This document shows, one piece after another, positions 1,656 to 58,678 of a stretch of 64,000 nucleotides of DNA (positions are counted from its first letter, which is position 1; the number at the start of each line of letters is the position of its first letter). The DNA lies in the IMG/VR virus record IMGVR_UViG_3300037116_000299, positions 62,001 to 126,000 of that record; one strand, given 5' to 3'. The position numbers and the translations under genes were made by a program. A model generated the notes under the pieces. That model made no database searches. It saw nothing but the letters and a program-made list of their open reading frames with translations, and was not told where the DNA came from.

Positions 1656-1985
1656 CTATGCTGCTTTAGTGGTAGCGATCACACGCCCATGGCGCCGGAT
1701 CGGCGTAACCACAGCGAACTCGAGATCGAGCTGGCCTTCAGAGAAACTCTTGATGGGCACGGCACTGATCAGGTTCGCTTCACAGATCTGTTCGAGATCG
1801 ATGATCAACTTACCGGACAGGCCCCAGTCCAACTCGACCGTGAACAGTTCCTCGGCATCGAATTGCTCCCGCAGCTGGGCTCTTCCCAGCCGGATCGCGT
1901 CGGTTACAAGATCCGCACCGACACTAAAGTGCAGTTCAAGACCGGTCTTAGTCCGGTCGCCCAGACGAAACGTATATCGGTTCAT
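1656..1985 (-). CDS. hypothetical protein
   Basis: ORF MNRYTFRLG...TKAA, divergent from the XRE regulator. Confidence 0.55.
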   Translation of the reverse strand: MNRYTFRLGDRTKTGLELHFSVGADLVTDAIRLGRAQLREQFDAEELFTVELDWGLSGKLIIDLEQICEANLISAVPIKSFSEGQLDLEFAVVTPIRRHGRVIATTKAA

Positions 1986-2057
1986 ACTGTCCTTTCCCAA
2001 ACAGACTGTCAGTTGACAGGCGGTTCCATACCGTCCAACAATTGATGCAGAGGTTTC

Positions 2058-2486
2058 TTGATGCCGAAGGCAATGGGGCAGCGCACCAACACGCTCGGAG
2101 CACATATTCTGAAGCGCCGAACCGCCCTGGGGCTTACCCAGCGTGATGTTGCCCAGGCCTTAGGGCTTCGTACAGACGAGTTCGTCGGCCTGATGGAGCG
2201 AGGTCAGCGTCAGCCAAACTACGAACGGCTGCCGGAACTGGCGACTGCTCTCCAGACTCCGGTGTTTGTCCTCTTTCGCCTAGCGATCCGGGACGTCTAT
2301 CCCGGGCTGGCTCAGATCCTGTTCCGGAAAACCGTCGGCTTTCGCAAGTCCTCTCGGCCTCCGAAGACTTATGACCTCATGGACCGGCTGGACTCCTTAT
2401 CCCCGAACGTCCGGCGGACAATCATCGAGATGATCAACCGGCTGCACCAGGAACAGGATGCTCGGGCGGTGAAGAAGCGGGCGTAG
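2058..2486 (+). CDS. XRE-family helix-turn-helix transcriptional regulator
   Basis: RRTALGLTQRDVAQALG...VGLMERGQRQP HTH_3 pattern; one of very few plus-strand genes. Confidence 0.85.
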   Translation: MMPKAMGQRTNTLGAHILKRRTALGLTQRDVAQALGLRTDEFVGLMERGQRQPNYERLPELATALQTPVFVLFRLAIRDVYPGLAQILFRKTVGFRKSSRPPKTYDLMDRLDSLSPNVRRTIIEMINRLHQEQDARAVKKRA

Positions 2487-2602
2487 CGCCTGGGCAGGTG
2501 TCCAGATGATCCAGGAACTGTGAAGAAGGCACTGCGGCGCCGCATTCACACACGATCGGGCAGATGCACTTATAGCGCCGACATTCAAAACACATCGCTC
2601 CG

Positions 2603-3154
2603 TCACTCATGGAAATACGTCTCCTCGATCGTGCGATCAATCATTCCCTGCAGCTCACGGCCGATTCCAATCGAACGAAACTCCCAGTCTTGCAGGCTGG
2701 GATACGCTCGCGATTCCTTCAACTTGGTGGTCTGCACCGCCTGGCGGACCTTGAGCCCTCTCAGCATAAGCACCACAAACTGGCCATAGCTGACGGGTTC
2801 ACAAGGTAGCTTGAAGCGAATCCGGTTCACTCGTTCCAGCATGTCCGCCAGTTCCCGCGTCTCACGACCATTGGTCAGCTCATGGATGTTGGCCATTCGG
2901 AGCTGCTGGGCGTATACCCCTTTGATCTGCTGATTCCGCTCCCACTGACCCCGGAACTGAAGGTGACGAAACATCCGGGAAATAGGACGAAAGTCGTTGA
3001 GCGACTCGAGCGATTCCCGTCTCGCGTCCACCGCAACAAACCCAAACGTCAGAACTCCAAAAGGTGTATCCCCAGAAAAGGTGCAATCCAAGCCCGTCTT
3101 CGGCTCATAAAGCAGCGCGATATGCGACGGGTCATACGGCTCCCGCTTAGACAT
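2603..3154 (-). CDS. hypothetical phage protein
   Basis: ORF from MSKREPYD, coupled to neighbours. Confidence 0.6.
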   Translation of the reverse strand: MSKREPYDPSHIALLYEPKTGLDCTFSGDTPFGVLTFGFVAVDARRESLESLNDFRPISRMFRHLQFRGQWERNQQIKGVYAQQLRMANIHELTNGRETRELADMLERVNRIRFKLPCEPVSYGQFVVLMLRGLKVRQAVQTTKLKESRAYPSLQDWEFRSIGIGRELQGMIDRTIEETYFHE

Positions 3155-3407
3155 TGGGGAACATCGAACGGGTGGTAGGCTCCCGCTTCTCAACGACCGA
3201 CTGCACAAAGGTGATCTTGGCCGTGGTGATCTTGCGGCCGCGAATGGCAGGATGCTTGCGGATCTCTTTCCAGGCGCGGTTCAGCGCCAGGCCGGCGTTG
3301 CTGGCCTTGACGGTGGTGCTCTGGTAGATCCCGCCGCCCTTCAGCTCGGGGAACATGAAGTTCACGGCGAAGATGTGTTCGTTCTCTTCGTTCTTAGCTT
3401 TTGGCAC
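3147..3407 (-). CDS. hypothetical protein
   Basis: ORF in overlapping gene train with phage-like codon use. Confidence 0.6.
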   Translation of the reverse strand: MPKAKNEENEHIFAVNFMFPELKGGGIYQSTTVKASNAGLALNRAWKEIRKHPAIRGRKITTAKITFVQSVVEKREPTTRSMFPNV

Positions 3408-3810: not shown

Positions 3811-4307
3811 ACTTTCCTTTCGGGTATGCCACGGAGCGGCGCGCAGAGCGCTGCCAGCTCGCCCTTGCAGAAGAAGCCGACTGGGTCAGTCTCCCGCCAG
3901 GTGGTCTTGACTTCGTCGTACTGGATGAGGTGCTGTAACAGACGGCCATAATCGGCCAGCATGGGAACCATCTTGCGGGCGCCGGAACGAATCCAGAGTA
4001 CGTCGTAAAGGTGTTTGTCGACACCCAGGGCGGCGGTCTCGACGGCCCAACCTAGTTCAAGCGCTGGCTGCCAGTTTGATCCGATCATGATATCGACCAG
4101 GTTCTCGGCAGCCTGCAACGTGTGCTGACCCTTGACCCTGCGTGTGAACAACTTCTCAGCGATCTGAATCATGGGCCCGATGACGTACTCCATCGAGATC
4201 AGCAGTTTGCCATCGCTGGCCAGGTAGCTGTCCTTGATGACACTTCCCTGCCAGCAGGTCAGGTCGACCGGCCGGGCACTAAGCAGCTTCAGTTTGTTGC
4301 GTCCCAA
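3807..4307 (-). CDS. hypothetical protein
   Basis: ORF overlapping both neighbours. Confidence 0.55.
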   Translation of the reverse strand: MGRNKLKLLSARPVDLTCWQGSVIKDSYLASDGKLLISMEYVIGPMIQIAEKLFTRRVKGQHTLQAAENLVDIMIGSNWQPALELGWAVETAALGVDKHLYDVLWIRSGARKMVPMLADYGRLLQHLIQYDEVKTTWRETDPVGFFCKGELAALCAPLRGIPERKV

Positions 4308-5028
4308 GAGAGTCCTCCTGTCCTATCCAGGCATCTGCCAATTGCTTGCAGACGCCCAGACATTGCAATGCCACTGGATCGAGCGCGATCGGATTCGCTA
4401 ACGCAAAGTCCTTCAGGCGCTGGACAAGTCGCGGGTACTCCGCGACGTATTCTTCAGCGGTACCTCCGGTCCAGGAGTTGGGGTATCTCCAGAGATTGCC
4501 TGGGAACTCCTGATCGAGCCGGGCTTCCAGCTCGTTCATCTCCGGCACCTTGCCGCCGATCTGGTTGCGCCGGATCCTGAAGCCGCTCCCGCGGAAACGC
4601 GGGTGCACCTCGTGCATCTTCACGTAACGTGGTTTGCAGCCGGGCAAGATGACCCAGTCACCGATTTTGAGCCCCTGGTGCTTGCGGGCATGCGCGATCA
4701 CTTCGCTGCGCCACTGCCGGGCATGCTCGTTGGGAGGTTCGGGCACATCCTTGAAGAAGGTCAGCGGGCAGGTGTAATACCCGGGTCCTCCTGATTCACT
4801 GACGTCCTTGTAGCCCCACTCGTCCTTAGCAAAGCGCTTCATCATGATGCACACGATGAACCGTTCGGACTCAGTCGACCCGTCCGCTGTCCGCTCCAGA
4901 ACGACCCATAAGTTGTTGCCTTTGGTCACCTTCTTGAGGCACCGCGTCGTGTTTGCGCCCGATGTCCAGGACTTTGTCAGCTCCTCGATGAGACTCTTGC
5001 GATCGTAGTAGCCTGAACTCCATCCCAT
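4279..5028 (-). CDS. DUF6927-like phage/plasmid protein
   Basis: MGW start with SD; WGYKDVSESGGPGYYTCP...WR motif. Confidence 0.6.
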   Translation of the reverse strand: MGWSSGYYDRKSLIEELTKSWTSGANTTRCLKKVTKGNNLWVVLERTADGSTESERFIVCIMMKRFAKDEWGYKDVSESGGPGYYTCPLTFFKDVPEPPNEHARQWRSEVIAHARKHQGLKIGDWVILPGCKPRYVKMHEVHPRFRGSGFRIRRNQIGGKVPEMNELEARLDQEFPGNLWRYPNSWTGGTAEEYVAEYPRLVQRLKDFALANPIALDPVALQCLGVCKQLADAWIGQEDSLGTQQTEAA

Positions 5029-5038
5029 CACGTTCTCC

Positions 5039-5674
5039 TTAGGCTGCGACCTGGACGGCCGCGGCAATCTCGACCTCCAACAGAGGACACTTGCAGGCGA
5101 GTAGTTTGGCTTTACAGCCGTTGCAGAGGGCGAAGCCTTCCTTGTCGACCCGAAGCGGCTTGGGCTCGTCGAGCAGGCCAATCCGGAACAACTGACCGGC
5201 GGTGACCTTGCCTTTCGCGCCTGGCTTGGTCGGCATGGGAGCAAAGATATCGGCGATAATCCGGCCGTTGAGCGCCTCGTGGCACAGGAAATCAGCTTCC
5301 TTGTTGGTCTCGCGGTGATCCCAGTGCACCTTCATCGGCATCGGAATCCGCCGGCGCAGTTCCCACGCAGTCTCGCGCAGCTCATTCAACCGCGCATCCT
5401 TGCATTCGAACTTGCCCATCAGCTGGTTTGAAACCAGCTGCGAGTCCAGGTTGAACTGGAGCGCGTCGACGTCCGGATACTTGTCGAGGATTGTGGGTAA
5501 CGCATGCATGGCCAGGACTACACCCTGCCACTCCGCTACGTTGCTGGTGCCTTCAAGTATGCGGTTCTGAGCCGCAACGAAGGTGCCGTCTTCGAGCCGG
5601 GCTACGAAGGCGGCCGCGGCTTTGCGTTCGGCAGTGGTCCCGCCACCGCCGTCGGTATTGATGAATAGCTTCAT
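5039..5674 (-). CDS. rnhA: ribonuclease HI (archaeal-like type) with C-terminal Cys-rich tail
   Basis: TDGG, SNVAEW, LDSQLV and RETNKEADFL catalytic motifs. Confidence 0.85.
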   Translation of the reverse strand: MKLFINTDGGGGTTAERKAAAAFVARLEDGTFVAAQNRILEGTSNVAEWQGVVLAMHALPTILDKYPDVDALQFNLDSQLVSNQLMGKFECKDARLNELRETAWELRRRIPMPMKVHWDHRETNKEADFLCHEALNGRIIADIFAPMPTKPGAKGKVTAGQLFRIGLLDEPKPLRVDKEGFALCNGCKAKLLACKCPLLEVEIAAAVQVAA

Positions 5675-6207
5675 GCTGCTTTCAACATCGCAATCTCGCG
5701 GCGGGCGTACTGCTTCCGCGTCTTCAGGAACTTGTCGAAGGCAAGCTTGCGGGTGATTCCCTTCAGCGAGTCGATGATGCACTTGCCGGCCAGGTGATCG
5801 ACCTCGTGCTGGATAGTCCGAGCTTCCAGACCCTCGGCGATGATCGTGATGACCTCGCCATCCAGATTGTTGGCAGTAACCTCGATCTCATCGGAGCGCA
5901 ACATGCGGATCTCCATCCCAGGCATGCTCAGGCAACCTTCTTTGCCCCAGGTGCGCTCGGTGCTGAAGTCGATGATTACTGGGTTGATCAGGGCCTGCAG
6001 GGCGCCGCCGGATGTCTCGCGGTAGACAATGACCTGGGCATTGATGCCCAACTGATTGGCAGCCAAACCGTAGGCCTTGTGCTTCTCGCAGACAGCTTTC
6101 ATGTTCTCGACCAGCTCGGCGATGATGGGCATATCTTCGGGCACATCCACAGGAGCACAACGGGTCAGAAGCATGGGATCGGGGTACTCGATCAGCGAAT
6201 AGTTCAT
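5671..6207 (-). CDS. def: peptide deformylase
   Basis: Motifs GLAANQLG, EGCLS and QHEVDHL. Confidence 0.95.
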   Translation of the reverse strand: MNYSLIEYPDPMLLTRCAPVDVPEDMPIIAELVENMKAVCEKHKAYGLAANQLGINAQVIVYRETSGGALQALINPVIIDFSTERTWGKEGCLSMPGMEIRMLRSDEIEVTANNLDGEVITIIAEGLEARTIQHEVDHLAGKCIIDSLKGITRKLAFDKFLKTRKQYARREIAMLKAA

Positions 6208-13089: not shown

Positions 13090-13580
13090 GCGTGAGGTCG
13101 CTAATCGACCACCACGAGGGAGGAAGGCTCCCGGGCTTTCACCGGGATGCAGGCGACTGAGTATTCAAGTTCAACCCTTACTTGATGCCTTGTTAGGCAG
13201 CAGCGAGATACGCTGCCTCGAATGCCGCGGCCGGAGCCGGGAAAGCGAGGACTTCTGCGGTCTTGCTGGCGAGGTAACCCGTGGTGTTGGCAGTTATTCG
13301 TCGTGGTCTCCCATATCGCGGGCGGCCGACTCGGCGCGTCACCATCTTGTTCCGTATCCCGTCGAAGCCGTGACGGGCCCACCTCAAAGCTCTTGTCCTA
13401 TTGGGACAGTGGTTCAAAAGAGCGTCGAGGTGGACCCGGCGGGAGTCGAACCCGCGTCCGAAACGAAGAAGAAGATGTGTGTCTTTTCACGAGCGTTTTA
13501 GTCCATCCGTTTCCAGCGGACCAAACCCCATTGCTGGGGAAACTTGTTATGTCCACCTCCAGAGAATCGCATCGGGAAAG
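13090..13580 (-). ncRNA. ssrA: tmRNA, circularly permuted two-piece gene (acceptor piece ~13580-13431, spacer 13428-13381, coding piece 13380 to ~13090; outer ends approximate)
   Basis: 3' tmRNA end GGACGCGGGTTCGACTCCCGCCGGGTCCA lies upstream of the 5' end GGGCCCGTCACGGCTTCGACGGG; G3-U70 pair; ATAACT-GCC resume site; tag ends in YLAAA*. Confidence 0.9.
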
Positions 13581-15426: not shown

Positions 15427-15437
15427 TAAGGAATCTC

Positions 15438-15800: not shown

Positions 15801-15896
15801 CTTCAGGGCCTATCCTCTTCTACGAAGATTCGCACAGATTGTAGCGCGCTCCTCGATCTCGCGACATCTCGACCTGCTATTGTCCTGGTCGGCTGA

Positions 15897-20554: not shown

Positions 20555-21094
20555 TCATGCGGCAAGCTCCTGGGGCACCGCGGCTCCTTGCCGCGCTGCC
20601 TTCTTGACCGAACTCACATCGGCCCGGGTGATGCGATACCGCTTCACCAACTTCTGGGTCCAGTGCTTATTCTTGTCCAGAACCAGTTTGTACGCACAAG
20701 CAATGATGTGCTCTGGCGTAATGCTGGTGCAAACGACTTTCTGACCATTCCAGTCGAAGCGATAACAAACGAAGACACGCTTGTTGTCGATGATGAAAGG
20801 CTTCCGCTCTTGCCAATGCTCATAAGCATGGCAAGCGGTCATGTTCCCTACCTCGACTGCTGCCTTGTAGAACATCTCGTGGCTACAGCCAATCCAATAT
20901 CCGGCCCGGAAGTCATCAAAGAATCGGTTGAAGTCAGTCAGGCCGAATCGCATGCCGCTGGTGACTGCTAGCCGAACCGCCGTATTCATCGACTGATTGA
21001 TCCGGATGTAGGCGAAGTCTGTGGCCTGCTGGCTCTTCTGCCATACGTGCAGGCATAAGCTGTACGCCGCGCTGTTTCTCTTGCAAGTCTTCAT
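20555..21094 (-). CDS. hypothetical phage protein
   Basis: ORF MKTCKRNS...QELAA with AGGAG SD. Confidence 0.6.
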   Translation of the reverse strand: MKTCKRNSAAYSLCLHVWQKSQQATDFAYIRINQSMNTAVRLAVTSGMRFGLTDFNRFFDDFRAGYWIGCSHEMFYKAAVEVGNMTACHAYEHWQERKPFIIDNKRVFVCYRFDWNGQKVVCTSITPEHIIACAYKLVLDKNKHWTQKLVKRYRITRADVSSVKKAARQGAAVPQELAA

Positions 21095-21108
21095 GATTCT
21101 CCTAAAAG

Positions 21109-21186
21109 TGGTCAGTGTGGAAGGATTTGAACCCCCGACCTCGCTCTCCAAATGAGCGCGCTCTAACCGGACCGAGCTACACACTG
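21109..21186 (-). tRNA. tRNA with Pro-type body; loop ATTTGGA reads TTG (Gln) in the standard register
   Basis: CAGTGTG/CACACTG acceptor, A73, CCA; arm CGCTC-ATTTGGA-GAGCG. Confidence 0.8.
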
Positions 21187-29002: not shown

Positions 29003-29224
29003 TTACGCCGCTGCGGCTTCCGCTGCATCGGTGGTCGCGGCCGGAGCTGCGGTGTTCTTGGAGCCGCGGGTCGACTTCGCCTTGGTCGTCGTCGTGATCG
29101 TGGTGGTCGCGGTCTTCGCGTTCACCAGGGCCGTGACGAAGTTCTTGGTCGTGGTCGCCTGCTCGTTGGTTTGGGCGTTGATTGCCGTCACCAGGAAGGA
29201 TTCGAAACTGATCTTCTTTGCCAT
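29003..29224 (-). CDS. small Thr/Ala/Lys-rich protein
   Basis: MAKKISFESF...AAEAAAA; strong codon bias. Confidence 0.55.
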   Translation of the reverse strand: MAKKISFESFLVTAINAQTNEQATTTKNFVTALVNAKTATTTITTTTKAKSTRGSKNTAAPAATTDAAEAAAA

Positions 29225-29749
29225 TGTGTTTGTCCCTTTCAAGGAGAACTGCTGCGCGTTTTGTTAGCCGGGTTCGCGCCCACCGGTCAAATTGGGGACG
29301 CCATGGCTTCTTGCAAAGTCATAGCGCACCTCCACCACCAGCAGTAAAGGCTACTGGTCCTGTTCCCCGATTGTTACGGATCGGGGACCGTGCAGACATC
29401 GGGTAAAACCCTTAGCTGCTTGCATACATCTGAGGTCCTGCTGCTCAAGATCCATACTGGCCCCTGAGCAGCAACTACCAAAGCTATGCGGCCTTCTTTG
29501 CTGCGTGAACGCATTCTTGTGCGATCACCTTCAGCAAATTCGATGTTGCCGTCTGACCCAGGACTTCGCCCTGGAGTTCTCGGATCTTCGACCCGAGACT
29601 GGTTACCATCTGGTTGTGACACTTCAGACACACGGCTCGCTTCATCCGCTGAGTTGTGCATGCGGTACAAGTAAGCGCTGACATTTGCAGTTTCGATTTC
29701 CTGCTTCTGGGAGAATCCATTGGTTGACCCTCGGTGCTTCACAGCATCG

Positions 29750-34213: not shown

Positions 34214-34977
34214 ATTCGTGTCTGCCCCTTTGCGTGGCGAATGACCTTGTTCCCGTACGGGCTCATCTTCTGTTCCTGAGCTGTCAGGTCGTACTTGTGA
34301 TCCTTCCAGGCCTCGCATGCATGAACAGTTTCAGCATGAACATGGCCATCCGGGATGTCGCCAAACCAACGCCTCACGTGGCACCCACAGGCCAGTCGGG
34401 CCTCAATGCACATCGTCACGACTCGGCGAGTGGCCTTGATCTTGAGCTTGGGACGACGCGGACACTTGTTCAAATGCTTGAACAGAGGTGTCCTGTCTAA
34501 GACCGCACCGCAGTGCGGGCAGTGCTCTCGGCAGCCCTTCATCAGGCGGCCGCGGGTGTGGTGTTGATGGTGTCCAGCATGCCGCCGAACCGCTCCATCA
34601 GCGTCTGGGGACGCGTGCCGCGGGATGCAGCTGCTACCAGTCGGAGTTCGATTGCACCCTGGTCAAAGGTCACGATCTCGTCAGCAGACGAGGGTTGGGG
34701 TGCCATGTTGTGTTCGAGATACTCTTCACGAGCCTCCGCAGAGGCGAATCCAGCGAAACTACGGTTGTCCATGTTGCTCCTTCGGTCGTCGGTGCCAGAG
34801 CCTCAATATCCATGCAGGAATGAAGGCTCCTTTCTTGTGTGCAGATACGCGAAGCGGTATGTGCAGGTCATCGGCGATCGCTCGGATCGCCGCGTAAGCG
34901 GGATGCTCCCGGAATTCCTTGATCGCCGATTCTTCGCTATCGGCGATGCCCTCGATGAGGATCATGCGGATCTCCAT
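34210..34977 (-). other. three short hypothetical genes (34210-34542 Zn-finger-like, 34542-34772, 34759-34977)
   Basis: Coupled ORFs between RNA ligase and CCA enzyme. Confidence 0.5.
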
Positions 34978-38549: not shown

Positions 38550-39104
38550 TTAGGCAGCTGCCAGGATGGCCTTCTGCTTGTCGCTGTAGAAAGCGATCAG
38601 CTTCTGCATGACATCCTGTGCAGACTGGACCGTCAGGGTGCCTTTGCTGTGGACTCCGATTGGAGTGCCGATGCCACGGCAGATCCGAATTCCCTGCCCT
38701 GTTCCGCCGCCGCCGTCGCGGCCGGGCAGAGCCAGGCACGCTGTCGCGCCGTCCACGATCCCATAGTTGCGGGCATGCAAGGCAAAGGGGCCGCGCGACA
38801 AAGCCGCAGGATTGGGATGGTACTTGGTGACCGACTCAGTCCAGAGCGGATGGTGCTTCGGGTCATAGACCGTGCAGGCCGCCAGCGACGGAATCTTGTT
38901 CCGGTTGTAGCTGCCCCAGGGAAGAAATACGTCCAGCAGTCCGGGCTTGGCGCCCATCATGGCCAGGTAATCGATGCCGTCGGCACCGCCGGTACGGATC
39001 CTGACGCCTAACTGCGTGCTCAACGTCCAGGCAACCTCCTGGGCCAGGTCGATCTGAAACAAGTCCGGTTCGCGCGTGCCAATGATTGCCAGGCTCAGGT
39101 CCAT
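38550..39104 (-). CDS. SLOG/DprA-like Rossmann-fold protein
   Basis: AIIGTRE, RTGGADGID, FLPW, HARN, GGTGQGIR. Confidence 0.75.
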   Translation of the reverse strand: MDLSLAIIGTREPDLFQIDLAQEVAWTLSTQLGVRIRTGGADGIDYLAMMGAKPGLLDVFLPWGSYNRNKIPSLAACTVYDPKHHPLWTESVTKYHPNPAALSRGPFALHARNYGIVDGATACLALPGRDGGGGTGQGIRICRGIGTPIGVHSKGTLTVQSAQDVMQKLIAFYSDKQKAILAAA

Positions 39105-48283: not shown

Positions 48284-51201
48284 TTATGGCTCGAGAGCGA
48301 ACATGAAGCGCTGGGAGTTCTGGTCCACGTTCCACTTGTTGACCAGCTGGTACGCTTCCAGGATCGGCATGCCACTCATGGTGGACATGCCGACTTCTCT
48401 GAAGTGAGATTCATCGAATGGCAGCCGTTCCACAGAATCGGTGGCCAGAAGCTTTCGCAGATAGTGAGTGAATCGCATTAGACTCGGTCCTCGAACATGC
48501 TGTCGAACGTGCCGCTCCCGAATTCAACATCGGTAGCCAGCTGGTGCAGCTCATCGGCCGTGAATGGACGGAATGTAGGTGCTGCCGGCCGCGCGACGGT
48601 GAAGCTCTTGTCCTGAATGGCGGCGTTCCTACCGCGCTGAGAAACCAGCACGCTGGGTACGCTAACCACACCACCGCCGATCAGTCTGCCGTTCATACGG
48701 AAGGTGACGTAGCGGATGTTGGTGTCAGCCAAGTTGGTGTGAACTCGCAGGCCTACCACGCTGCGCGGGAAAGCCTTGCAATCGTAATCCCGCTCCCAGC
48801 CGTTGGAAATGCGACGGCGGACCCGGCGGACCCAGGAATCGGCTCCGCGAATCTCGCGAGTGAACACGTCCTTGGATCGTGGTAAGAACGATGCTGAGTT
48901 GGATGTTGCCACAGCGAGCGGGGCGTTGGCAGCCCAGAGTTGATCGATGATGTCGGGAGTGATCCACTCACGAATGGCGCCTCGAACGGCGTCAGAGATT
49001 CCTTTGCCTTGGCTCATGCTGCTTTCACCTCCGGGTGAATTCCTGTGGGCTTGGACGGCGTAATCAAATACATCCAGCCTCCGATCTTCGAGGTAGGCCG
49101 GTAATGCTTGGAACCGAAGGTGTCCAGCACAAACCACTGGCCAACACCCTTCGCATCGTGGCCGCCGACCATCCACCCGGCGACGACAATGTCGTCGCCC
49201 GTGTACCAGATCCAGGCTAGCCGGTCCGGCATCGATGGCTTGAGCGGGCTTTGCAGGATGACATCGACCAGGCCCGCCTGGCGCTTGAATTCCTGCAGCT
49301 CCTGCTGATCGCAGTGATAACAGCCACGCTGAGGTACCGCGCTGGCCGTGGTGTAGTGGTGATCGGCGCTGTGCTCGCAGCCGTTGGTCCGGCCCAGCTC
49401 CTGGAGTTCATTCATGACGCGGCTGCGATTGGTATCGAGCCCGCGGTACTCAAGGCGCTTCGCCTCGGACTGTTGATTCACTTCCGTCCAGTTCATGATT
49501 TCCTTCCTTGGTTCAATTCGAGGAGCTAGGGCACCCTTTGCACAAGGCGCCCGAGAGGGTTGAGCCGATCACGGATCTCCGCTTCGTGGCTGTCTCTCTT
49601 GTCGCTCCAACACGGCCTGACATCTACGCGCATGCGCTATGCGCTCCGCCGACCGTGCATTCTCAATCTCGCGGCAGGGCTGGTTTTCACCAGCCCCACC
49701 TTGATGTCTGAAGACCCCGGGCAGTCCACGATCGGGATAGTTGTCCGGCACTCAATGTCCGGACTCCCTACGGTGAAGACTGTGGTTCCCTTCGCTTCAG
49801 ACTGCCGTGTTTATGGGCGTCTCGTTGAGCTGTTTTCGTGCCAGGGCAACCACAGCACGATACAGCGCATACTTCTCGTTGCAAGTCATGACCATGAGGC
49901 TGTGAGCTACCTTGCCTCGGGCGTACTCGGTGTCCTGTACCTCAGCCATAACGTCCGAGTCGTCGAACCAGAAGCGTTCGGACGGCAACGGGGGCAGGAT
50001 ACTCGCCGAAGGACTGGGCTGCAGCTTCCTGATCGCCTCGTCGTATCCCTCAAGCCGGGCAACACGTTGTCCGTTCTCGGAATCGGTGACCAGGGCTGTG
50101 AATTCTTCCAGACTGATGAGCTTCGCTTCGAACAGCTCGTGCCGCTGGTAGCGAACGAGGTCAGTCAGGCGCTGGGTCTGTTGCGCGAGATGCTCGATCG
50201 CGATGCCCATGTCCATACGCGGAGCCGTCTTCCACTCCTTTGCTAGCTGCAGATACTTGTCCAATTGGGTCGCCCTTTCAGTTGAGTGCCTGGTATACGA
50301 GGCAGAAGCCTGTGCGGCAGACCAACTGCCTCGTATATCAGGTCGTGTGCTTGGAGGTCCTGAGACATCTGCGCACCAGGATGGAAGCCGCGCGTCTCGA
50401 TCAGGACAGGTTGGGCGGGTGACTCCAAGCTGTGATCACCATATCGGTTGGCCGAAGCCAATCGAATAAGGTGAAACTACTAGACCCGTTGGAGATAGGA
50501 GTCACGAATCTCGTCGAGGGTGAACATGGTGCCACACCCTGTCTCGTCATCCCCACACACGAAGGGTGGAAAGAACTTCGCCGCACGCAGGTCAGTCATG
50601 TCGTCGAATCCGCATGCAGGGCATTGGAGCGTGTATTCGTAGGACTTCAGTTCCCGGCCGTCTTCCGGCGCGGGATAGACCATATTGAGGTCCTGGTTGT
50701 AGATCAGCTTGGCCATGATGTCCTTACGCTGCTGCTGCTGCTGGTGGTTGAGCGGCAAACAGCGGCCGCCGGGTGGTAATAAGCTCTGCCTTCAGGGCGC
50801 GGGAGCGCTTGACTTCAAAGTCAGCAGCTTCGTCACCCTTCAGCAAGATCGTCGTGGTGGGCGTGCCCACTCTTACAGTGTCCGGCGATCGAGCGATGTG
50901 CGAGCACATGTCCAGGTTGATGTCGACGTCGTGGCCATCGCTGCGACGCACCGTGATCCAGTTAGCCATGCAGGCCTCCTCAGGCTTTCAGCTCGGCCTT
51001 CAGCTCTGGCACCTTGGCCAGCTCCGCAGGGTCATTGGTCGCCAGCGTTCCAGCTGACTCCCAGGTGGACTTGTAGTTCTGGCTGGATTTCACCAGCAAG
51101 TGGATGCTGTCAGAACTGACCGCCAGCGAGCCCAGCCGCTGATTCGCATCGTTAGCGATCAGTTGCTTGATCTCGCGTTCGGTGTAGGTGATGGTGACCA
51201 C
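48284..51201 (-). other. train of hypothetical genes (48284-48478, 48478-49017, 49014-49496, 49797-50264, 50480-50716, 50724-50969, 50980-51201)
   Basis: Coupled ORFs, many with SD sequences. Confidence 0.5.
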
Positions 51202-51211
51202 GGTGTTCTCC

Positions 51212-51619
51212 TCATGCCGCCATTGGCATGTCTGTCGATTGTTCGGACTTGGCTTGCTTCCAGCAATGCAGGAAGCCGCCCTCGTGTTCGCCGGTCTTCA
51301 TGTCGATGGCAAAGATGCCCATGAAGATGAGAGCCTCCAGCGCGAAGCTAGACATGAAGGCGAAGCTGATGCCACTGAGCACGCCGATAACGGTGCGCAC
51401 CCAGGGGGTTTTGATCGGCCTGGTGATCCAGACCAAGAGCCACACGATAAGCAGGGCAGGCAGTACCGAGGCTGTCAGGAGTAAAACTAGCAGTTCCGTG
51501 ACGCTCTTCGATATAAGCCAAACCACTGACTTCTTCATGTAGCGCTTCCGATTGCGCCAGTACAGCCAGCCGCCGGCGAAGGCCAGCACGGCAGCCCAGA
51601 AGGCGATGACTGTTTTCAT
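51212..51619 (-). CDS. membrane protein
   Basis: Hydrophobic helices. Confidence 0.6.
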   Translation of the reverse strand: MKTVIAFWAAVLAFAGGWLYWRNRKRYMKKSVVWLISKSVTELLVLLLTASVLPALLIVWLLVWITRPIKTPWVRTVIGVLSGISFAFMSSFALEALIFMGIFAIDMKTGEHEGGFLHCWKQAKSEQSTDMPMAA

Positions 51620-51904
51620 GCCGCGACCTTCATAGTTTTCTCGTAGGCACGCACCCTCAGGCTGGTGGCCACAGACTGGATGCCAGCTGAGAACAGATTG
51701 ACCAGGCCGGCCAGGATCTGCACGCTGAGCAAGCCCACGATAACGACGCCGATCCAGAACAGGACGGTTTTCATACGTTCTCCGGGTTGGGGAAAGGGAT
51801 GAGGACGCCGAGCACCTGCTTGCGCAGGCTCACGGACATCCTGAGAGAGATGCACACGGCGGCGCCGAGTGCAATGATGAGGGTGAACAGGAAGATGAAG
51901 GCTT

Positions 51905-52249
51905 TCAAGGGATAATGAATGTTCCTGCACGATACTCGGCATGCAGCACAGCGATGATATCGCCGTGGCACTCGTGCATCGGCCTGCAAAAGCAGCCCAG
52001 CACGTCAGTCTCCCGAAGCGTCTTCAGCTTGGCCAGGAACTTGGTGCGGACTGCAGGTGGGATGACATGATCCCACGTAGTGCTCCCGCGTGCCCAGTTC
52101 TCGCAATAGGACACAGCGTCAGCAACGCAAAGGACCTGGACGTAGGCCTTAGTCTTGGACAGGGGCAGATGGGTGAACGGATTGCCCATGTCGGAGCCAC
52201 GACCGATGTAGACGGTGGATGGCTCACGTTTGCAGTGGACTACTTGCAT
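51905..52249 (-). CDS. DUF4326-family protein
   Basis: VVHCKRE...VYIGRGSDMGNPF...LGCFCRP..CHGD. Confidence 0.82.
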   Translation of the reverse strand: MQVVHCKREPSTVYIGRGSDMGNPFTHLPLSKTKAYVQVLCVADAVSYCENWARGSTTWDHVIPPAVRTKFLAKLKTLRETDVLGCFCRPMHECHGDIIAVLHAEYRAGTFIIP

Positions 52250-52552: not shown

Positions 52553-54655
52553 CTACGCTGCTTGAGCGGTGTCCGCTGCAGGCTTCGACGCGAACAGCGA
52601 GGTCAGATACTGACCGAACTTGGCCGCGGTGGCCTTGGCTTTGGTGGGGATGGCCTTGAACATGGCCAGGTCAGACTTCTTGCCTTCGTCCTTGCGAACG
52701 AAGAGGTAGATGCCGCCCGTGAGAACAACTGCGAGGACCAGCGTGATGAATCCGAAGATCAGTTTCATGGTGATGCTCCTGGTGTTGGATTTGTGGTGCT
52801 AAGCCGCGCGCTGTTTGCGCCCCGGGTGACGAAACGTGCAAAGTAATTCGTAGGTGGTGTATCCAAAGAACAGGATGCAGAAGCAGGCAGCGATGAACTG
52901 CGCCAGTCTGACCGTCCCAATGAAGATCAGGCCGAGAATGGCCAGGATCGTTAGTTTCATGCCGCTCCTCTCAGAATGGTCTTGGTGTGCTCCTTGCTGA
53001 TCTTCCGCTGGCGTAGCGGCAGATACGCAAACAACATGGCCACATTGAAGATGGTGTTGCCCAGTGCGAAGATCACAGCGTTGGCTGAGGTGATGCCGTG
53101 GATCGCAAAGTTGATGGCCTCCAGCCCGAGCAGGCTGAGGCTCTTGTTCTTGTTCATCCAGGCGAGGGTCTGCTCCTTGCGCTTAGTGGGAACGAACCGT
53201 TTGAGGATCGGGATCTTGTCGATCTTGAGAAAGGCCGACCAGGCGAAGGCTCCGACGCCGACGCCGGCGATGGCAGAGCCTGAGTTGGATGGAGTGAGGA
53301 TCATGCAGCCACCTGCTTGCTTGGGATCCAGCTGGCACGCAAGCGTGCCTTCCGTTCCCTGTACTTGGTCTTGGCATAGCTGACCAGCCACTCGCCGGTA
53401 TAGAACCCGACGACGTAGCAGATGCCCCAGGCAAAGCCCAGGCCCATGAAGTACAGAATTGCGAGGACTTTACTCATCATGCGGGTGTCGCCTCCTGACG
53501 TTTGCGTTCTTCGTAGCGGTTCATCTCGCCACGCGTTTTGAACCAGAGACTGGCTCGTTCACCGTTGACCATGCAGATCTGGGTGTGCTCGAGCATCTTG
53601 ACGATGAACTCGGCGCGCCAGACCAGCCAGAGCAGGACAGCGCCTGCAGCCAGCGCACATGCAGCCATGATCTTGGTCATGACGCATCCTCCTGAAGCTG
53701 GCGATCGAAGTAACTATCGATCCAGCCAGCCACAATGGAGGTGATTTTCAGAGTCGTCCAGTAGATGACGTAGATCACACATCCTACCGGCAGCGCGATC
53801 ATGCAATAGAGCCTGAGGAAGTCGATCATGTGAACAACCTCACGGTCGAGCTAATCGGTTTCTGGCCAGGCCAGCGCTTGCGGATGGCGATGAGTGCCAG
53901 GTGCTCGAACGCCTTCGAGTTCACCAGCCAGCGTGAGCACGAGACCGTCCAGCTTGCCACGCGTGCCTGCCACTTGGTGGCCGAGCCCGCTTGCCTGCGC
54001 AGCCGTTCATCCACGATCGGGATGTGATGTTGAGCACCACCTGCACCGTAGATCAAGATCTCCCGGTCCCGTTTGGGATTGTGAGACTTGCGACGGAGCA
54101 GGATGGCGCTCCAGAAGCCGACCTCATACGAAGGGATCAGCCATAGCAGCCAGAGTGGCATAAGCCCTCCTTTCAGGCCTAGTGAAGCGGTGTGTGGGTC
54201 AGGATGTGAACCATCCAGCTGTGGCTGGCGCTGATGACGCCTGAAGCCATACCGATGATGGTCAGGAACAGACCACCACCAATTAGCGTGCCCAGGATCT
54301 TGAGACCCGGGGACATGGGCCTGGCGGAGATGGTGAGAGCGTGCAGCTCCGCGAGCGCGGGCGCCTGCGCCTCCACCTCTGCACGGGTAACCCCGTACTT
54401 GGTGCAATACTTGTCGATGCGTTCGAAGGCCTTCTTCTCCAGCTCCGCGAATACGGGATTGCCGGCGGCCTTGCCCTTGGCCTTGTGACCGTTGGCGGTC
54501 TCGATGATCTTGGCCAGCTCGGCCTCGAGAGACTCCTTGGCGTTGTTCTGACGCCAGCCTTTGAGACTGGTGCCAATACCACGCACGCTCAGCTTGAGCT
54601 TGCCGGACAGCTTGTCGCCCCAGTATGTGGGCTCAACGTAGGTGTTTTCTGCCAT
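52553..54655 (-). other. cluster of small membrane-anchored proteins (52553-52768, 52957-53304, 53477-53680, 53826-54161, 54179-54655 and smaller ORFs)
   Basis: Short ORFs, each with a hydrophobic segment. Confidence 0.5.
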
Positions 54656-54726: not shown

Positions 54727-54999
54727 TCACCCAGGCTCAGTAGTAGGTGGCAGGATCCTTGGCGATGGTTGGCGCTTGGATGCTGCCTTGTCGGTCGTGC
54801 CTGCCTCTTTGTAGGCCTTGCACTGTTGGACAAACTCAATGATGGATCGAATGTTGGCCTGCGTACAGCGCACGCTCCCCATCACGTAAGACTCGATGTT
54901 GGTCATGCGGTCCATCGAACCCATCTCAGCGAGCGCCCCTTCCAAACGAAGGGACGCTGCTTCAAGCTCTTCAGACATCTTGACCAGGTTGACTGCCAT
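54727..54999 (-). CDS. hypothetical protein
   Basis: TAATG overlap with upstream gene. Confidence 0.55.
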   Translation of the reverse strand: MAVNLVKMSEELEAASLRLEGALAEMGSMDRMTNIESYVMGSVRCTQANIRSIIEFVQQCKAYKEAGTTDKAASKRQPSPRILPPTTEPG

Positions 55000-55622
55000 T
55001 AGGCCGCAACCTCTTCTGGCATCAGCTCAGACGCCGGTGCGCTCTTGCCACAGCACGCATCGCCGCAGCCCTCGGAGCAGCCACCGTCACCGCAACACGG
55101 TTTGGGGCAGTCCTCGGAGCTGGCGGTGAACGCGCCGGCAAACTCACCTTCGAGATCCAGGGCCTGATCCTCGGGCACGATTGTGCTCGGATCGATGCCG
55201 CGTTCCTTGAGCTTCTCGACTTCCATCAATGCCTGCTGTTCGAGAGCAAACTCTCCGATCAGGGCGGTGACGGCATTGTTGAACTCTTCCTCGGACTCGG
55301 GCTTGGCCGGGTCCAGGTTGACCAGGCGGGTGCAAGCGGACTTGAGCGCGCGGATGATCATGTTGGTCTGCTGTTCCAGGCCATTGATCTGGTTGAGAAT
55401 GGCATCGCTGACCACCTCGTGAGCCTCGGGCTCGACCGTTACCTTGCAGCCAACGAACCGGCCATCAGTTGCGGTGATGTTCTCAAGCATCTCGTTCGCT
55501 GCCTTGCGGGCCGCTGCACGGTTGCCAATGGTCAGAGCGGGCGGCTGAAAGGTGCTCACCTTGCCGTCCTTGACAACCTTGGCAATGAATGTCCAACGGC
55601 GAATCTTGTTCTGTACTGACAT
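54999..55622 (-). CDS. hypothetical protein with Cys-rich C-terminus
   Basis: GGAGG SD; CPKPCCGDGGCSEGCGDACCG tail. Confidence 0.6.
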   Translation of the reverse strand: MSVQNKIRRWTFIAKVVKDGKVSTFQPPALTIGNRAAARKAANEMLENITATDGRFVGCKVTVEPEAHEVVSDAILNQINGLEQQTNMIIRALKSACTRLVNLDPAKPESEEEFNNAVTALIGEFALEQQALMEVEKLKERGIDPSTIVPEDQALDLEGEFAGAFTASSEDCPKPCCGDGGCSEGCGDACCGKSAPASELMPEEVAA

Positions 55623-55651
55623 GAATCCTCCTGAGGCGTGCTCAGATCTGG

Positions 55652-56110: not shown

Positions 56111-57106
56111 GGTCCCAGCATGCAGCGCCAGGTGAATGTACCAAAGGCCGGGGCTTTCACCCCGGCTCCTGGCTGAGGAGTTCATTAGCGGCTCTTCATA
56201 AGCGTACCTCCGTTGGCAAGCGTGCCAACTACCGGTTTCATGGACGGGACCGGCTCCCGACCTGCACTCGTGATCTCTCGTCCGAACATGCAGGGTGATT
56301 CCACACAGACTGGTGGCGATGAAACTGAATGCGGTCGACACGCTATCCGTGATGCGACCAGTCCGCTTACTCTTTGTTACCTGTGTCTCCACTTGCTTCG
56401 CTGGTCATCATTTGAAGTGGCGACCAGGGTCCAATTCCCTGTGCCAAATCTTCGATGCGAAGGGCATACGGCCAGTGTGGCCGTAACAGGTTCCGAACGA
56501 AGCGTAACCGGAACCGTCCCCAACTTCATTGTGTCCGTGATGTCCCACCGGTCCCACACCGCGAGTGCGAGTGCGAGCAGGAACCACAGACAGAGATCAA
56601 TCAGGCGCATGAATACCCCGATCCACCAGTTAGGCCTTGCGGTGAGCCTTGTTCGCAGCCTTGCGGCGGTTGCCGCGCGAGCGTTGCGAAACCTTGGACT
56701 TGCCGTTGGTGCATTTGAACTGACGTGGACGGCCGCCGCCGCCGGACGGCGTTGCAGCCTCGATGGATGGCATGCCGGCGCCAAGCGAACTGGCGAGGGC
56801 GGTGAGTACAGCAGCTGAGTTCATGTCGTCTTCTTTCTTGAGTTCGATGACGCGTTGAGATGCTTCCAGAATGCCTGGCAGGAGGGTGCCAACCAAAGCT
56901 GCATTGGTAGCCACCAGGACGCGCCGTTTGGTATCCAAAATGACCCTTCCTGACCCGCTGGTTACCGGGTTGAGACAAGTTTGCCTATACTAGAGCGGGA
57001 AAACAGTAGGGTGAAAACCGTAGTTCCACTCCAAAAGCTCCAGTGGAGGGTAGGGGAACATGCCATTCCCCACCCTCCGCATGGACAAAGTCGAACCTTA
57101 GCTCGA

Positions 57107-57502
57107 CTACGCTGCCTGCTCACCCGAATTGGATGACGCCGCAGCCACCGCAACAGGTCCCTGAGGGGCCTTGCTGATGACTGTGATCGACTCCAGCCGG
57201 ATGTTGCTGCCGTTGCCGCGCTTGCTGCTCTGCAGCACGCCCTTCGCACGCACAACGTCGCCCTTCGCAAGGGAGAGGAGCTGCTCGTGGATCAGCGGAT
57301 CTGCGGACTGCACGTAACGGTCGAAACCAGGCTCGGCCTCGATCGGGATGCCAACGTACAGGCGGTCGAAGCGGTCCTTCACCGGCTCGCCGGCTGCCAT
57401 CAGCACGCGGCCTTCGACAGTGGCCTCGACGTGCTTGTCCATCCCGATGCTGGTGCCCGATGAATCCTTCTGCTCGCGGTACACGGTCTTCGTTCCATAC
57501 AT
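57107..57502 (-). CDS. OB-fold-like protein
   Basis: ATVEGRV...LAKGDVVRAKGVL pattern; GGAGG SD. Confidence 0.5.
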   Translation of the reverse strand: MYGTKTVYREQKDSSGTSIGMDKHVEATVEGRVLMAAGEPVKDRFDRLYVGIPIEAEPGFDRYVQSADPLIHEQLLSLAKGDVVRAKGVLQSSKRGNGSNIRLESITVISKAPQGPVAVAAASSNSGEQAA

Positions 57503-57836
57503 AGAAAAGGCCCTCCTTGGGCCGGTTGTGTTCTCGTCAGTTGTGGGAATACCGCGTTGAAGCGGTCTCAGTTAGAGCTGAGCTGGATCGGGCTCGTGAA
57601 TCTCGCCCAGGAACAGCATGGAGGCGCTGAATTGGCCTACCGTGCATTCCGAACAGTTACGGCCGCGATAGGCACGGCCGGTTTCTTCCCCGGAGCGACA
57701 CAGAATGTCGTCGGTGTGAGACATCTTGTAGTGAGGGCAGGCCTTCTGGATGAAGTCTCTGGTCTTGCCCGCTACGGCGCGGCGAAGCTGGGTGCCGGCG
57801 GTGAGATCACCCGTCAGTACAACCAGCCGGCCAAGG

Positions 57837-58199
57837 TCAGTCTGTGGATCCGTCAGCTCCCGAGGGAGCGTTTGGCGTGGCAGACGTGGCATTCCGTTCA
57901 TTCGATACCTCTTCGTGGCTCTTCAGTTTCACTGCGTGAGGTTCGGTCCATGCAATCATCCGCATGTCCAACTCAGAGAGGTCAAGGCAGCGCCCTTCGA
58001 AGGTCACATCGAAGATCACCAGGTCAGCAATGTCCTGCAGCTCTGGCTTCTTGATCCGGATGGTGACGTCGAGGTTGGCTGCGCACTCCACGATGGAGAG
58101 AGGCAGGGGAAAGTCCGGATTGCACAGCAGCTGGATAGTGATCCGGCCAGGTTGATCCGGATCACCACCGAGAAGAGCACTGGCATCCCAGGTCTTCAT
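57837..58199 (-). CDS. hypothetical protein
   Basis: TGATG overlap with upstream gene. Confidence 0.5.
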   Translation of the reverse strand: MKTWDASALLGGDPDQPGRITIQLLCNPDFPLPLSIVECAANLDVTIRIKKPELQDIADLVIFDVTFEGRCLDLSELDMRMIAWTEPHAVKLKSHEEVSNERNATSATPNAPSGADGSTD

Positions 58200-58678
58200 C
58201 AGGCTGCCTTATCCAGGGGCTCGAGGTACGACAGGCTGATGCGGAAAGCATCGGCGATCTTGGTGAACGATCCCGGCTTGCTTTCCAGCACATCCGGGTC
58301 CGCCATTAGGTCGGTCCAGACGATCTCGAGAGCCTCCTTGTTGGAGTGAATCCGCTTGGCCAGGGCCAGCATGGGGAATGGCGACAGCAGGTCGTTGACT
58401 TCGGTCTTGGCCTGCTCCATGGCGGTGTTGAAGCCGAGGTTCCGGGTGGAGACGAACAGTTCGTTCGCCCTGAACTGGATCAGGTACATCGAGACGATTG
58501 CCTTGGCCCGAGGGTCGATGATGATCTGCATGATGGCCGCCTTGATGGCGTCTTCGAAGTTGTCGGGATTGGCCTTGAGACGTTCAATGGTCTCGGTGAT
58601 GACTTCCCCGATGTAACAGCTGCCGGTCACAACGCGGTCGACGGACTCGAAGATTCCGAGGGCTGAGGGTTTCGACAT
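58199..58678 (-). CDS. hypothetical protein
   Basis: ORF with strong codon bias. Confidence 0.6.
   Translation of the reverse strand: MSKPSALGIFESVDRVVTGSCYIGEVITETIERLKANPDNFEDAIKAAIMQIIIDPRAKAIVSMYLIQFRANELFVSTRNLGFNTAMEQAKTEVNDLLSPFPMLALAKRIHSNKEALEIVWTDLMADPDVLESKPGSFTKIADAFRISLSYLEPLDKAA

What the first reader, a model, noticed from the sequence alone, without database searches (positions are those of the whole stretch)
1656..58678. About 20 proteins end in -AA: hard-wired ssrA-like degrons?
Seen C-termini (by ORF low coordinate): TKAA 1656, TEAA 4279, QVAA 5039, LKAA 5671, ELAA 20555, RRAA 27300, AAAA 29003, KKAA 29484, LIAA 33005, PAAA 34542, LAAA 38550, VKAA 49014, AAAA 50724, PMAA 51212, KVAA 51616, AQAA 52553, RGAA 52957, EVAA 54999, EQAA 57107, DKAA 58199. 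Some can be explained by GC-ATGA start/stop overlaps, but many end GCN-TAA or GCN-TAG with no overlap. Known: ClpX recognises C-terminal AA. Inference: programmed turnover of early proteins, or saturation of host ClpXP, matching the phage tmRNA tag (LAAA).
Basis: partly seen in the sequence, partly recalled or inferred. Interest (0 to 1): 0.6.

Follow-up and report, generated by a model that had tools for sequence, protein, structure and literature searches.

The report
Phage early proteins ending in Ala-Ala
About one in six genes in this stretch of a large temperate phage genome encodes a protein ending in Ala-Ala, the two residues the bacterial ClpXP protease reads on its best-known destruction tag. 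The excess is real, is confined to non-structural genes, and recurs in lambda, P22 and several other phages, which suggests built-in instability of early proteins, though that is untested.

Summary
My own codon-model gene caller puts 102 genes with a stop in the window, and 18 end in Ala-Ala (17.6%), against 1.2% for the Ala-Ala dipeptide inside the same proteins (p 5e-16). Without ATGA stop/start overlaps the count is 13 of 82 (p 2e-11). In the whole 214-kb genome it is 32 of 267.

- **Position:** only the last two residues are Ala-rich. All four Ala codons are used, and no wider nucleotide motif exists.
- **Control frames:** non-coding open frames end in AA 1.3% of the time.
- **Gene class:** AA ends sit in replication, nucleotide-metabolism, transcription and small early-type genes (31 of 209). 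They are nearly absent from the virion block (1 of 58).
- **Other phages:** the excess also occurs in unrelated phages: lambda, P22, Rhizobium 16-3, Lacusarx and phiCbK. It does not occur in phiRSL1, Bxz1, Cr30, phiKMV or P2, nor in a 200-kb E. coli sample (0 of 172).

The best reading is a hard-wired ssrA-like C-terminal degron that makes early and middle proteins short-lived. This is inference only. The residue before AA is mostly polar, so by E. coli rules many tails would be weak degrons. I found no published description in the searched library.

The parts
1656..2000 (-). 114-aa protein of unknown function ending KAA. The stop is at the low coordinate.
   Evidence: Coding score 22; no Pfam or PHROG hit.
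4279..5031 (-). 250-aa protein ending EAA.
   Evidence: phrog_21047, function unknown.
5039..5674 (-). RNase H-like protein (RVT_3 domain, residues 13-134 of 211) ending VAA. A 77-residue tail follows the domain.
5671..6207 (-). Peptide deformylase ending KAA. Its stop overlaps the next start (ATGA).
   Evidence: Pfam PF01327, 7e-39; sequence.
20555..21184 (-). 209-aa protein of unknown function ending LAA (ATGA overlap).
   Evidence: identical in the 97% relative.
29003..29242 (-). 79-aa protein ending AAAA.
   Evidence: The 97% relative keeps AA through a synonymous change in the last Ala codon.
33005..34318 (-). T4 Rnl1-type RNA ligase ending IAA. Homologues align only up to about residue 418 of 437.
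34542..34772 (-). 76-aa protein ending AAA.
38550..39104 (-). DprA-like protein (domain residues 4-148 of 184) ending LAAA, the tail most like ssrA.
49014..49496 (-). 160-aa protein of unknown function ending KAA.
   Evidence: It is only 56% identical to its counterpart in the otherwise 97% identical relative, yet both end KAA.
50724..50969 (-). 81-aa protein ending in five alanines.
   Evidence: modest coding score of 11.
51212..51619 (-). 135-aa protein ending MAA (ATGA overlap).
52553..52768 (-). 71-aa protein ending QAA.
52799..52960 (-).
52957..53391 (-). 144-aa protein ending GAA (ATGA overlap).
54999..55622 (-). 207-aa protein of unknown function ending VAA.
   Evidence: In the 97% relative the tail differs upstream but keeps VAA, with a synonymous change in the -2 Ala codon. 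No homologue in the phage collection.
57107..57502 (-). 131-aa protein ending QAA.
58199..58678 (-). 159-aa protein ending KAA.
27300..27644 (-). Doubtful as a gene.
   Evidence: Coding score 0.014 per codon against a median of 0.265; no family hit.
29484..29720 (-). Doubtful as a gene.
   Evidence: Coding score -0.02 per codon; no family hit.
51616..51942 (-). Doubtful: a better-scoring ORF in another frame overlaps it.
13102..13521 (-). Phage-encoded permuted (two-piece) tmRNA. Its tag reading frame ends YLAAA and then a stop.
   Evidence: ARAGORN; Rfam RF04321, 68.7 bits; sequence read directly.

Best explanation
The Ala-Ala ends are selected at the protein level. They most likely act as hard-wired C-terminal degrons of the ssrA type (ClpX 'C-motif 1').

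**Proposed mechanism (inferred):** the free Ala-Ala carboxylate on a flexible tail is bound in the axial pore of the host ClpX, or of another AAA+ protease that reads non-polar C-termini. The protein is then unfolded and degraded. This would give replication, nucleotide-metabolism, transcription and small host-takeover proteins a short, tunable half-life, while virion proteins, which lack the tail, stay stable. The variable residue before AA would set the strength of each tag.

For a temperate phage such as this one (it has an integrase), this would also clear lytic-programme proteins after commitment to lysogeny and buffer leaky expression in lysogens.

**Shown here:** the enrichment, its positional and amino-acid specificity, its gene-class bias, and its recurrence in unrelated phages.

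**Inferred:** recognition by ClpX, degradation itself, and the biological purpose.
For: 1. **Size and specificity.** AA ends run at 10 times expectation, only positions -1 and -2 are affected, and AA is by far the commonest terminal dipeptide (32, next 6).
2. **Protein level, not nucleotide level.** All four Ala codons occur at both positions. There is no conserved sequence before or after, all three stop codons are used, and non-coding frames end in AA 1.3% of the time.
3. **Not stop/start overlap.** Pooled AA frequency is 7.6% where the next start is far, 8.5-11.7% with short gaps, and 12% with 1- or 4-base overlaps.
4. **Not base composition.** phiRSL1 has the same GC and Ala content and 1.1% AA ends; Bxz1 (65% GC) has 1.0%.
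5. **Class bias.** In this genome the virion block, which holds the terminase, portal, capsid and sheath genes, has 1 of 58 against 31 of 209 elsewhere (p 0.005). Pooled over five phages the figures are 6 of 190 against 81 of 580 (p 9e-6).
6. **Recurrence in unrelated genomes.** These genomes share at most 9 reciprocal best hits with this one.
   - Lambda has 7 (B, lambdap35, bet, ea10, ral, NinC, NinG).
   - P22 has 7, all early genes (kil, 17, cro, ninB, ninG, ninY, ninZ).
   - 16-3 has 16 of 88, Lacusarx 16 of 167 and phiCbK 25 of 293.
7. **Host contrast.** A 200-kb E. coli K-12 sample has 0 of 172. Bacterial C-termini in general are depleted of hydrophobic residues, Ala included, and of pairs of hydrophobic residues (PMC7246954).
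8. **Purifying selection on AA.** All 14 shared AA ends are kept in the 97% relative. Two synonymous and no non-synonymous changes fall in the AA codons, and AA survives in a pair only 56% identical.
9. **Tail character.** Tails are richer in disorder-promoting residues (0.60 against 0.50, p 4e-4). Pfam domains end 10-80 residues before the C-terminus.
10. **Published support.** Terminal Ala-Ala is the critical ClpX determinant (PMC10862746). Individual temperate-phage proteins with C-terminal degradation tags are known: the BPs repressor and integrase (PMC3694055).
11. **The phage's own tmRNA** appends a tag ending in AA.
Against: - No degradation was measured for any of these proteins.
- The antepenultimate residue is Lys, Glu, Asp, Gln or similar in 20 of 32 tails and Leu in 2. 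In E. coli many AA-ending tags are weak.
- AA ends are evolutionarily labile: across phiCbK/Colossus orthologues, 3 are kept and 12 are present in only one of the two. This fits a generic or weak pressure better than gene-specific regulation.
- Constitutively destabilising replication enzymes is costly.
- To my knowledge lambda Bet, Ral, NinC and NinG have never been reported as ClpXP substrates, despite decades of work.
- P2 (temperate) has 0 of 42. Caulobacter phages Cr30 and Cd1 have essentially none. The trait is therefore neither lifestyle-wide nor host-wide.
- The host of this phage is unknown.
Confidence: 0.45

Rival explanations
1. Decoy or saturation. The tails serve to occupy ClpXP rather than to regulate their bearers. 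Many abundant AA-ended early proteins would compete with host substrates and ssrA-tagged chains, stabilising whatever the protease would otherwise remove.
For: Which orthologue carries AA changes freely while the overall frequency stays high, as expected if only the total load matters. The tails sit on proteins of unrelated function. The phage tmRNA adds further AA-tagged chains.
Against: Weak tags with polar residues before AA make poor competitors. The most abundant phage proteins, the virion proteins, lack the tail. In the close relative, AA is conserved gene by gene. Nothing here measures protease load.
Confidence: 0.12
2. A translation-level effect. Ala-Ala, or its GCN-GCN codons, before the stop improves termination, avoids stalling and tmRNA tagging, or favours re-initiation on the next gene in tightly packed early operons.
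For: AA ends are somewhat more frequent at 1- and 4-base stop/start overlaps (12%) than at distant junctions (7.6%). GCA is over-used at both positions, 38-41% against 16% internally. NNA codons are generally favoured before stops (PMC7246954). In P22, 5 of 7 AA ends sit in ATGA overlaps.
Against: The excess remains about six-fold at junctions with no nearby start. The most highly expressed genes, the structural ones, lack it. No stop-codon preference exists. Bacteria as a whole do not favour AA ends. Similar phages with equally packed genomes show no excess.
Confidence: 0.15
3. The Ala-Ala carboxylate is a handle for something other than host ClpX. Candidates are another protease (ClpAP, FtsH, Lon) or one of the phage's own AAA+ proteins. 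One of these is a Clp/Hsp100 D2-type module with an LGF loop at the position of the ClpP-docking loop of ClpC1-type proteins.
For: The genome encodes a 356-aa Clp D2-like ATPase and a 698-aa Cdc48/FtsH-like AAA protein. It encodes no ClpP and no SspB.
Against: Lambda and P22 (small genomes I know to lack one) and 16-3, phiCbK and Lacusarx (no AAA_2 match) show the same excess without such an ATPase. The Clp-like gene sits among virion genes and may be an assembly chaperone. The function of the LGF loop is inferred from position only.
Confidence: 0.12
4. No function: an artefact of gene calling or composition, or neutral drift.
For: Gene calls came from a crude home-made caller.
Against: For lambda the seven AA-ending ORFs, and for P22 the seven stop coordinates, match annotated CDSs; the P2 count was made directly on the annotated coordinates. 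The excess grows with coding score. Non-coding frames, phages of matched composition and E. coli show none. p values range from 1e-11 to 1e-22.
Confidence: 0.03

Closest known systems
ssrA (tmRNA) tag and ClpX 'C-motif 1' degrons (E. coli; Flynn et al. 2003, cited from PMC10862746)
   Same: A free C-terminal Ala-Ala on an exposed tail. The phage's own tmRNA tag ends YLAAA.
   Different: The tails are encoded in the genes rather than added by trans-translation. They are found on about 12% of the proteome. The residue before AA is usually polar rather than Leu. No SspB-type upstream element is evident.
Integration-dependent immunity of mycobacteriophages BPs and Brujita (PMC3694055)
   Same: Temperate-phage proteins (repressor, integrase) carry hard-wired C-terminal degradation tags read by host proteases such as ClpXP, and these set the lysis/lysogeny outcome.
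   Different: There it is two regulatory proteins, with tag removal by integration. Here it is dozens of enzymes and small proteins. The integrase of this phage does not end in AA, and no tag-removal mechanism is seen.
Caulobacter CtrA and other ClpXP cell-cycle substrates ending in AA (own knowledge: Domian, Quon and Shapiro 1997, where AA-to-DD stabilises CtrA)
   Same: A native C-terminal AA is needed for ClpXP proteolysis. phiCbK-type Caulobacter phages share the AA excess.
   Different: CtrA also needs an N-terminal determinant and adaptors. The host of this phage is unknown. Caulobacter phages Cr30 and Cd1 lack the excess.
Classical unstable phage proteins: lambda O (ClpXP), MuA (ClpX), lambda N, Xis, CII and CIII (Lon/FtsH) (own knowledge)
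   Same: Early and regulatory phage proteins are kept short-lived by host AAA+ proteases.
   Different: Those proteins use N-terminal or other signals. None is an Ala-Ala tail, and none represents a genome-wide pattern.

Membership tests
ssrA-like C-terminal degron (ClpX C-motif 1) | Protein ends in Ala-Ala with a free carboxylate | tested here: met
   18 well-supported genes in the window and 32 in the genome.
ssrA-like C-terminal degron (ClpX C-motif 1) | Favourable upstream residues: a non-polar, ideally Leu, antepenultimate residue, and no Pro, Gly or short polar residue there | tested here: inconclusive
   The residue at -3 is L, I, M, V or A in 12 of 32 tails and K, E, D, Q, R, S, T or G in 20 of 32. 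The rules come from E. coli, and the host here is unknown.
ssrA-like C-terminal degron (ClpX C-motif 1) | Tail is exposed or unstructured, so that it can enter the ClpX pore | tested here: inconclusive
   Only composition was tested: disorder-promoting residues make up 0.60 of the tail against 0.50 in other proteins, p 4e-4. Pfam domains end well before the C-terminus. No structure was predicted.
ssrA-like C-terminal degron (ClpX C-motif 1) | ClpX-dependent degradation that AA-to-DD abolishes | not testable with these tools
   Needs reporter or in vitro assays.
Permuted (two-piece) tmRNA | Match to the covariance model, with a tag reading frame ending in a proteolysis signal | tested here: met
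   RF04321 at 68.7 bits against a gathering score of 47. ARAGORN gives a tag ending YLAAA. The predicted 32-residue tag is unusually long, and its resume codon is not verified.
ClpP-partner Clp ATPase (for the 356-aa phage protein outside the window) | Hsp100 D2 AAA+ module with a pore loop, plus an [LIV]-G-[FL] ClpP-docking loop | tested here: inconclusive
   The AAA_2 and D2-small domains are met. An LGF tripeptide aligns with the LGF of a ClpC1-type chain, at a place where ClpB has a gap. Docking itself was not tested.

The most novel reading that the evidence does not exclude
A whole class of phages makes its early and middle proteome short-lived by ending those proteins in the minimal ClpX recognition dipeptide. 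The class includes lambdoid phages, Rhizobium 16-3, phiCbK-like and Lacusarx-like phages and this jumbo temperate myophage. This would be a generic, evolvable timing device, with gains and losses of AA tuning each protein.

This phage would go further than the others. It adds its own AA-ending tmRNA tag and its own Clp-type unfoldase with a ClpP-docking loop, so taking over host ClpP proteolysis.
Probability: 0.25. Interest if true: 0.8.

Novelty: new variant of a known kind. Interest (0 to 1): 0.66.

Why it matters
If the tails are degrons, protein lifetime is written into the last two codons of a large share of phage early genes. That would be a simple layer of temporal control, visible from sequence alone. 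It would help to:
- sort phage genes of unknown function into early and late classes;
- explain why some phages carry a tmRNA;
- predict which phages depend on host Clp proteolysis.

It is directly testable in lambda and P22, where seven proteins each carry the tail. It would also give synthetic biology a natural series of graded C-terminal tags.

Tried and rejected
- **Stop/start overlap.** ATGA overlaps account for only 7 of the 32 AA ends. AA frequency is similar across junction types.
- **Nucleotide motif or repeat at gene ends.** None was found beyond the two GCN codons.
- **GC or Ala composition.** Rejected using phiRSL1, Bxz1, PaBG and phiKMV.
- **Shared ancestry with phiCbK.** Rejected, with only 4 reciprocal best hits.
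- **'All Caulobacter phages'.** Rejected: Cr30 has 0 of 259 and Cd1 has 1 of 43.
- **'Only phages with a tmRNA'.** Rejected by lambda, P22 and 16-3.
- **'All temperate phages'.** Not supported: P2 has 0 of 42, although P2 has few early genes.
- **Host identification.** Scanning bacterial genomes with the 718-aa protein found nothing. With the deformylase it gave only distant, uninformative hits. There is no GcrA homologue. The permuted tmRNA points to Alphaproteobacteria or a few other lineages, but that is inference.
- **Host background for an alphaproteobacterium.** Could not be fetched.
- **Bhat et al. 2013 (Caulobacter ClpP trapping).** Not held in the library.


Full report
**What the window is**

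The 64-kb window is bases 62001-126000 of a single 214,300-base virus record with 58.9% GC. IMG/VR classes the record as a provirus. It encodes a tyrosine integrase at genome 210504-211661, so the phage is temperate.

The plus-strand block from about 140 to 210 kb holds the virion genes: terminase, portal, major head protein, tail sheath and a large lytic tail protein. The phage is therefore a jumbo myophage.

The window lies in the long minus-strand block. This block holds replication, nucleotide-metabolism, RNA-repair and many small unknown genes, seven tRNA genes and a permuted tmRNA.

No record in the phage collection matches at the DNA level. Two near-identical IMG/VR contigs exist, and one is a 97% relative. 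Against every other phage compared, the genome shares between one and nine reciprocal best hits.

**Checking the observation**

No gene finder was on hand, so I wrote a codon log-odds caller. It trains on the longest ORFs, iterates, and then picks non-overlapping ORFs greedily. A C-terminus depends only on which stop codon belongs to a real gene, so errors in start choice do not matter.

| Set | AA ends | p |
|---|---|---|
| Window, all genes | 18 of 102 | 4.6e-16 |
| Window, without NNATGA genes | 13 of 82 | 2.2e-11 |
| Whole genome | 32 of 267 | 5e-22 |

The Ala-Ala dipeptide has an internal frequency of 1.2%.

- Ala makes up 22% of residues at position -1 and 20% at -2, but 7.5% at -3. Single terminal Ala is at background once the AA genes are removed.
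- AA is the commonest terminal dipeptide by a factor of five.
- The fraction rises with coding score, from 12% to 16%. The 2,792 open frames that were not called end in AA 1.3% of the time.
Three have near-zero coding scores, and one AA-ended gene (52799-52960) was missed.

**Is it a nucleotide-level or a protein-level signal?**

- All four Ala codons occur at both positions, and all three stop codons are used.
- Aligning the 36 bases on each side of the stops shows nothing conserved beyond GCN-GCN.
- GCA is over-used. This is partly forced by ATGA overlaps and partly follows the general preference for NNA before stops.
- Across six AA-rich phages, AA ends make up 7.6% of genes whose downstream start is far, 8.5-11.7% with short gaps, and 12% with 1- or 4-base overlaps. 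Overlaps add a little but do not create the effect.
- In the 97% relative all 14 shared AA ends are kept. Two synonymous and no non-synonymous changes fall in the AA codons. One gene that has diverged to 56% identity still ends KAA.

**Which genes carry the tail**

The AA-ended proteins include:
- a sigma-like protein and a RecA-like protein;
- a 698-aa Cdc48/FtsH-like AAA protein;
- the exonuclease part of a family-A DNA polymerase and a clamp-loader subunit;
- a RecD2-like helicase and a DnaQ-like exonuclease;
- a nucleoside deoxyribosyltransferase and a dTMP kinase;
- a peptide deformylase, an RNase H-like protein, an Rnl1-type RNA ligase and a DprA-like protein;
- an Mre11/SbcD-like phosphoesterase;
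- many small proteins without homologues.

The virion block has 1 of 58 against 31 of 209 elsewhere (p 0.005). Pfam domains end 10-80 residues before the C-terminus. The last 15 residues are richer in disorder-promoting residues than in other proteins (p 4e-4).

**Other phages**

I ran the same caller on other complete genomes. P2 was counted from its annotated coordinates.

| Phage | AA ends |
|---|---|
| Rhizobium 16-3 | 18% |
| Lambda | 11.5% |
| P22 | 11.5% |
| Lacusarx | 9.6% |
| phiCbK | 8.5% |
| CcrColossus | 5.9% |
| Eleven others (phiRSL1, Bxz1, Cr30, Cd1, 7-7-1, phiM12, PaBG, S13, Delta, phiKMV, a 281-kb IMG/VR phage) | 0-3.8% |
| P2 | 0 of 42 |

- A 200-kb sample of E. coli K-12 has 0 of 172.
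- In lambda the seven proteins are B, lambdap35, Bet, Ea10, Ral, NinC and NinG. All are annotated CDSs.
- In P22 the seven are Kil, gp17, Cro, NinB, NinG, NinY and NinZ, all early genes.
- Pooled over five phages, late genes have 6 of 190 and the rest 81 of 580 (p 9e-6). The module boundaries for 16-3 and phiCbK were assumed.
- The trait does not follow GC content, the presence of a tmRNA, the host (Cr30 and Cd1 infect Caulobacter) or lifestyle alone (P2).
- Between phiCbK and Colossus orthologues (median identity 47%), AA is kept in 3 pairs and present in only one partner in 12.

**Interpretation**

The only well-established consequence of a C-terminal Ala-Ala in bacteria is recognition by ClpX, and to a lesser degree by other AAA+ proteases. 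A random-tag screen in E. coli found terminal Ala-Ala necessary but not sufficient, with upstream residues setting tag strength (PMC10862746). Bacterial proteomes are depleted of hydrophobic residues at their C-termini, Ala included, and of pairs of hydrophobic residues (PMC7246954). Temperate mycobacteriophages are known to tag their repressor and integrase for proteolysis (PMC3694055).

The gene-class bias argues against a termination-efficiency explanation, because such an effect should be strongest in the most highly expressed genes. I therefore favour built-in instability of early and middle proteins, with graded strength.

The caveats are the mostly polar residue before AA, the lability between orthologues, the cost of destabilising replication enzymes, and the complete absence of measurements. 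A decoy role, a translational role and a different reader of the tail remain open.

**Literature**

Seven full-text searches found no description of a genome-wide Ala-Ala excess in phage proteins. The library does not hold most subscription journals, so this does not prove novelty.

**Limits**

- Gene calls are my own except for P2; the AA-ended genes of lambda and P22 were checked against their annotation.
- Only 19 phage genomes and one host sample were examined, and they were chosen by hand.
- The host is unknown.

Noticed in passing
Outside the window: genome 178401-179471 (+), L167:18401-19471: A 356-aa stand-alone Hsp100/Clp D2-type AAA+ module sits among the virion genes. It has AAA_2 and ClpB_D2-small domains, and its best matches are the D2 halves of ClpB, ClpC and ClpA. 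An LGF tripeptide lies where ClpC1-type proteins carry their ClpP-docking loop and where ClpB has a gap. The genome has no ClpP and no SspB. phiCbK, Colossus, Lacusarx, 16-3 and phiRSL1 lack such a gene.
   Followed up: partly
Outside the window: genome 32221-34317 (-), L162:12221-14317: A 698-aa protein with a classic AAA domain (Cdc48/FtsH/PAN-like) and a 430-residue N-terminal part of unknown function. It ends in AA itself.
   Followed up: partly
window 14530-19344 (-): A low-GC island (about 51% GC, atypical codon usage, rejected by the codon model). It holds three long ORFs:
- a 637-aa TPR-repeat protein;
- a 380-aa Ser/Thr protein kinase;
- a 387-aa protein with a weak pilin-like hit.

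The island looks horizontally acquired.
   Followed up: partly
window 13102-13521 (-): ARAGORN predicts an unusually long 32-residue tag for the permuted tmRNA. It lacks the ANDN start typical of alphaproteobacterial tags, which the phiCbK tmRNA has. The resume codon may be mis-assigned.
   Followed up: no
window 33005-34318 and 36562-37776 (-): An Rnl1-type RNA ligase and a polynucleotide kinase-phosphatase lie close together. This is the T4-style tRNA repair pair and suggests a defence against host anticodon nucleases.
   Followed up: no
window 8389-9591 (-): A 400-aa protein with a D123 (Cdc123-like ATP-grasp) domain (PF07065; a family I know mainly from eukaryotes).
   Followed up: no
window 49014-49496 (-): This gene is only 56% identical between the phage and its otherwise 97% identical relative. 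That suggests a hot spot of diversification or gene replacement.
   Followed up: no
Outside the window: genome 1401-5610 (-) and 210504-211661 (-): The left end carries a T5orf172/ResIII helicase-like protein and an Eco57I-type methylase. The right end carries a tyrosine integrase. A temperate lifestyle is unusual for a 214-kb myophage.
   Followed up: partly
Lambda NC_001416 and P22 NC_002371 (loci L184-L186, L199, L204): Seven proteins in each of these model phages end in Ala-Ala. Almost all are early genes, including Bet, Ral, NinC, NinG, P22 Cro and Kil. The hypothesis can therefore be tested in standard laboratory systems.
   Followed up: partly
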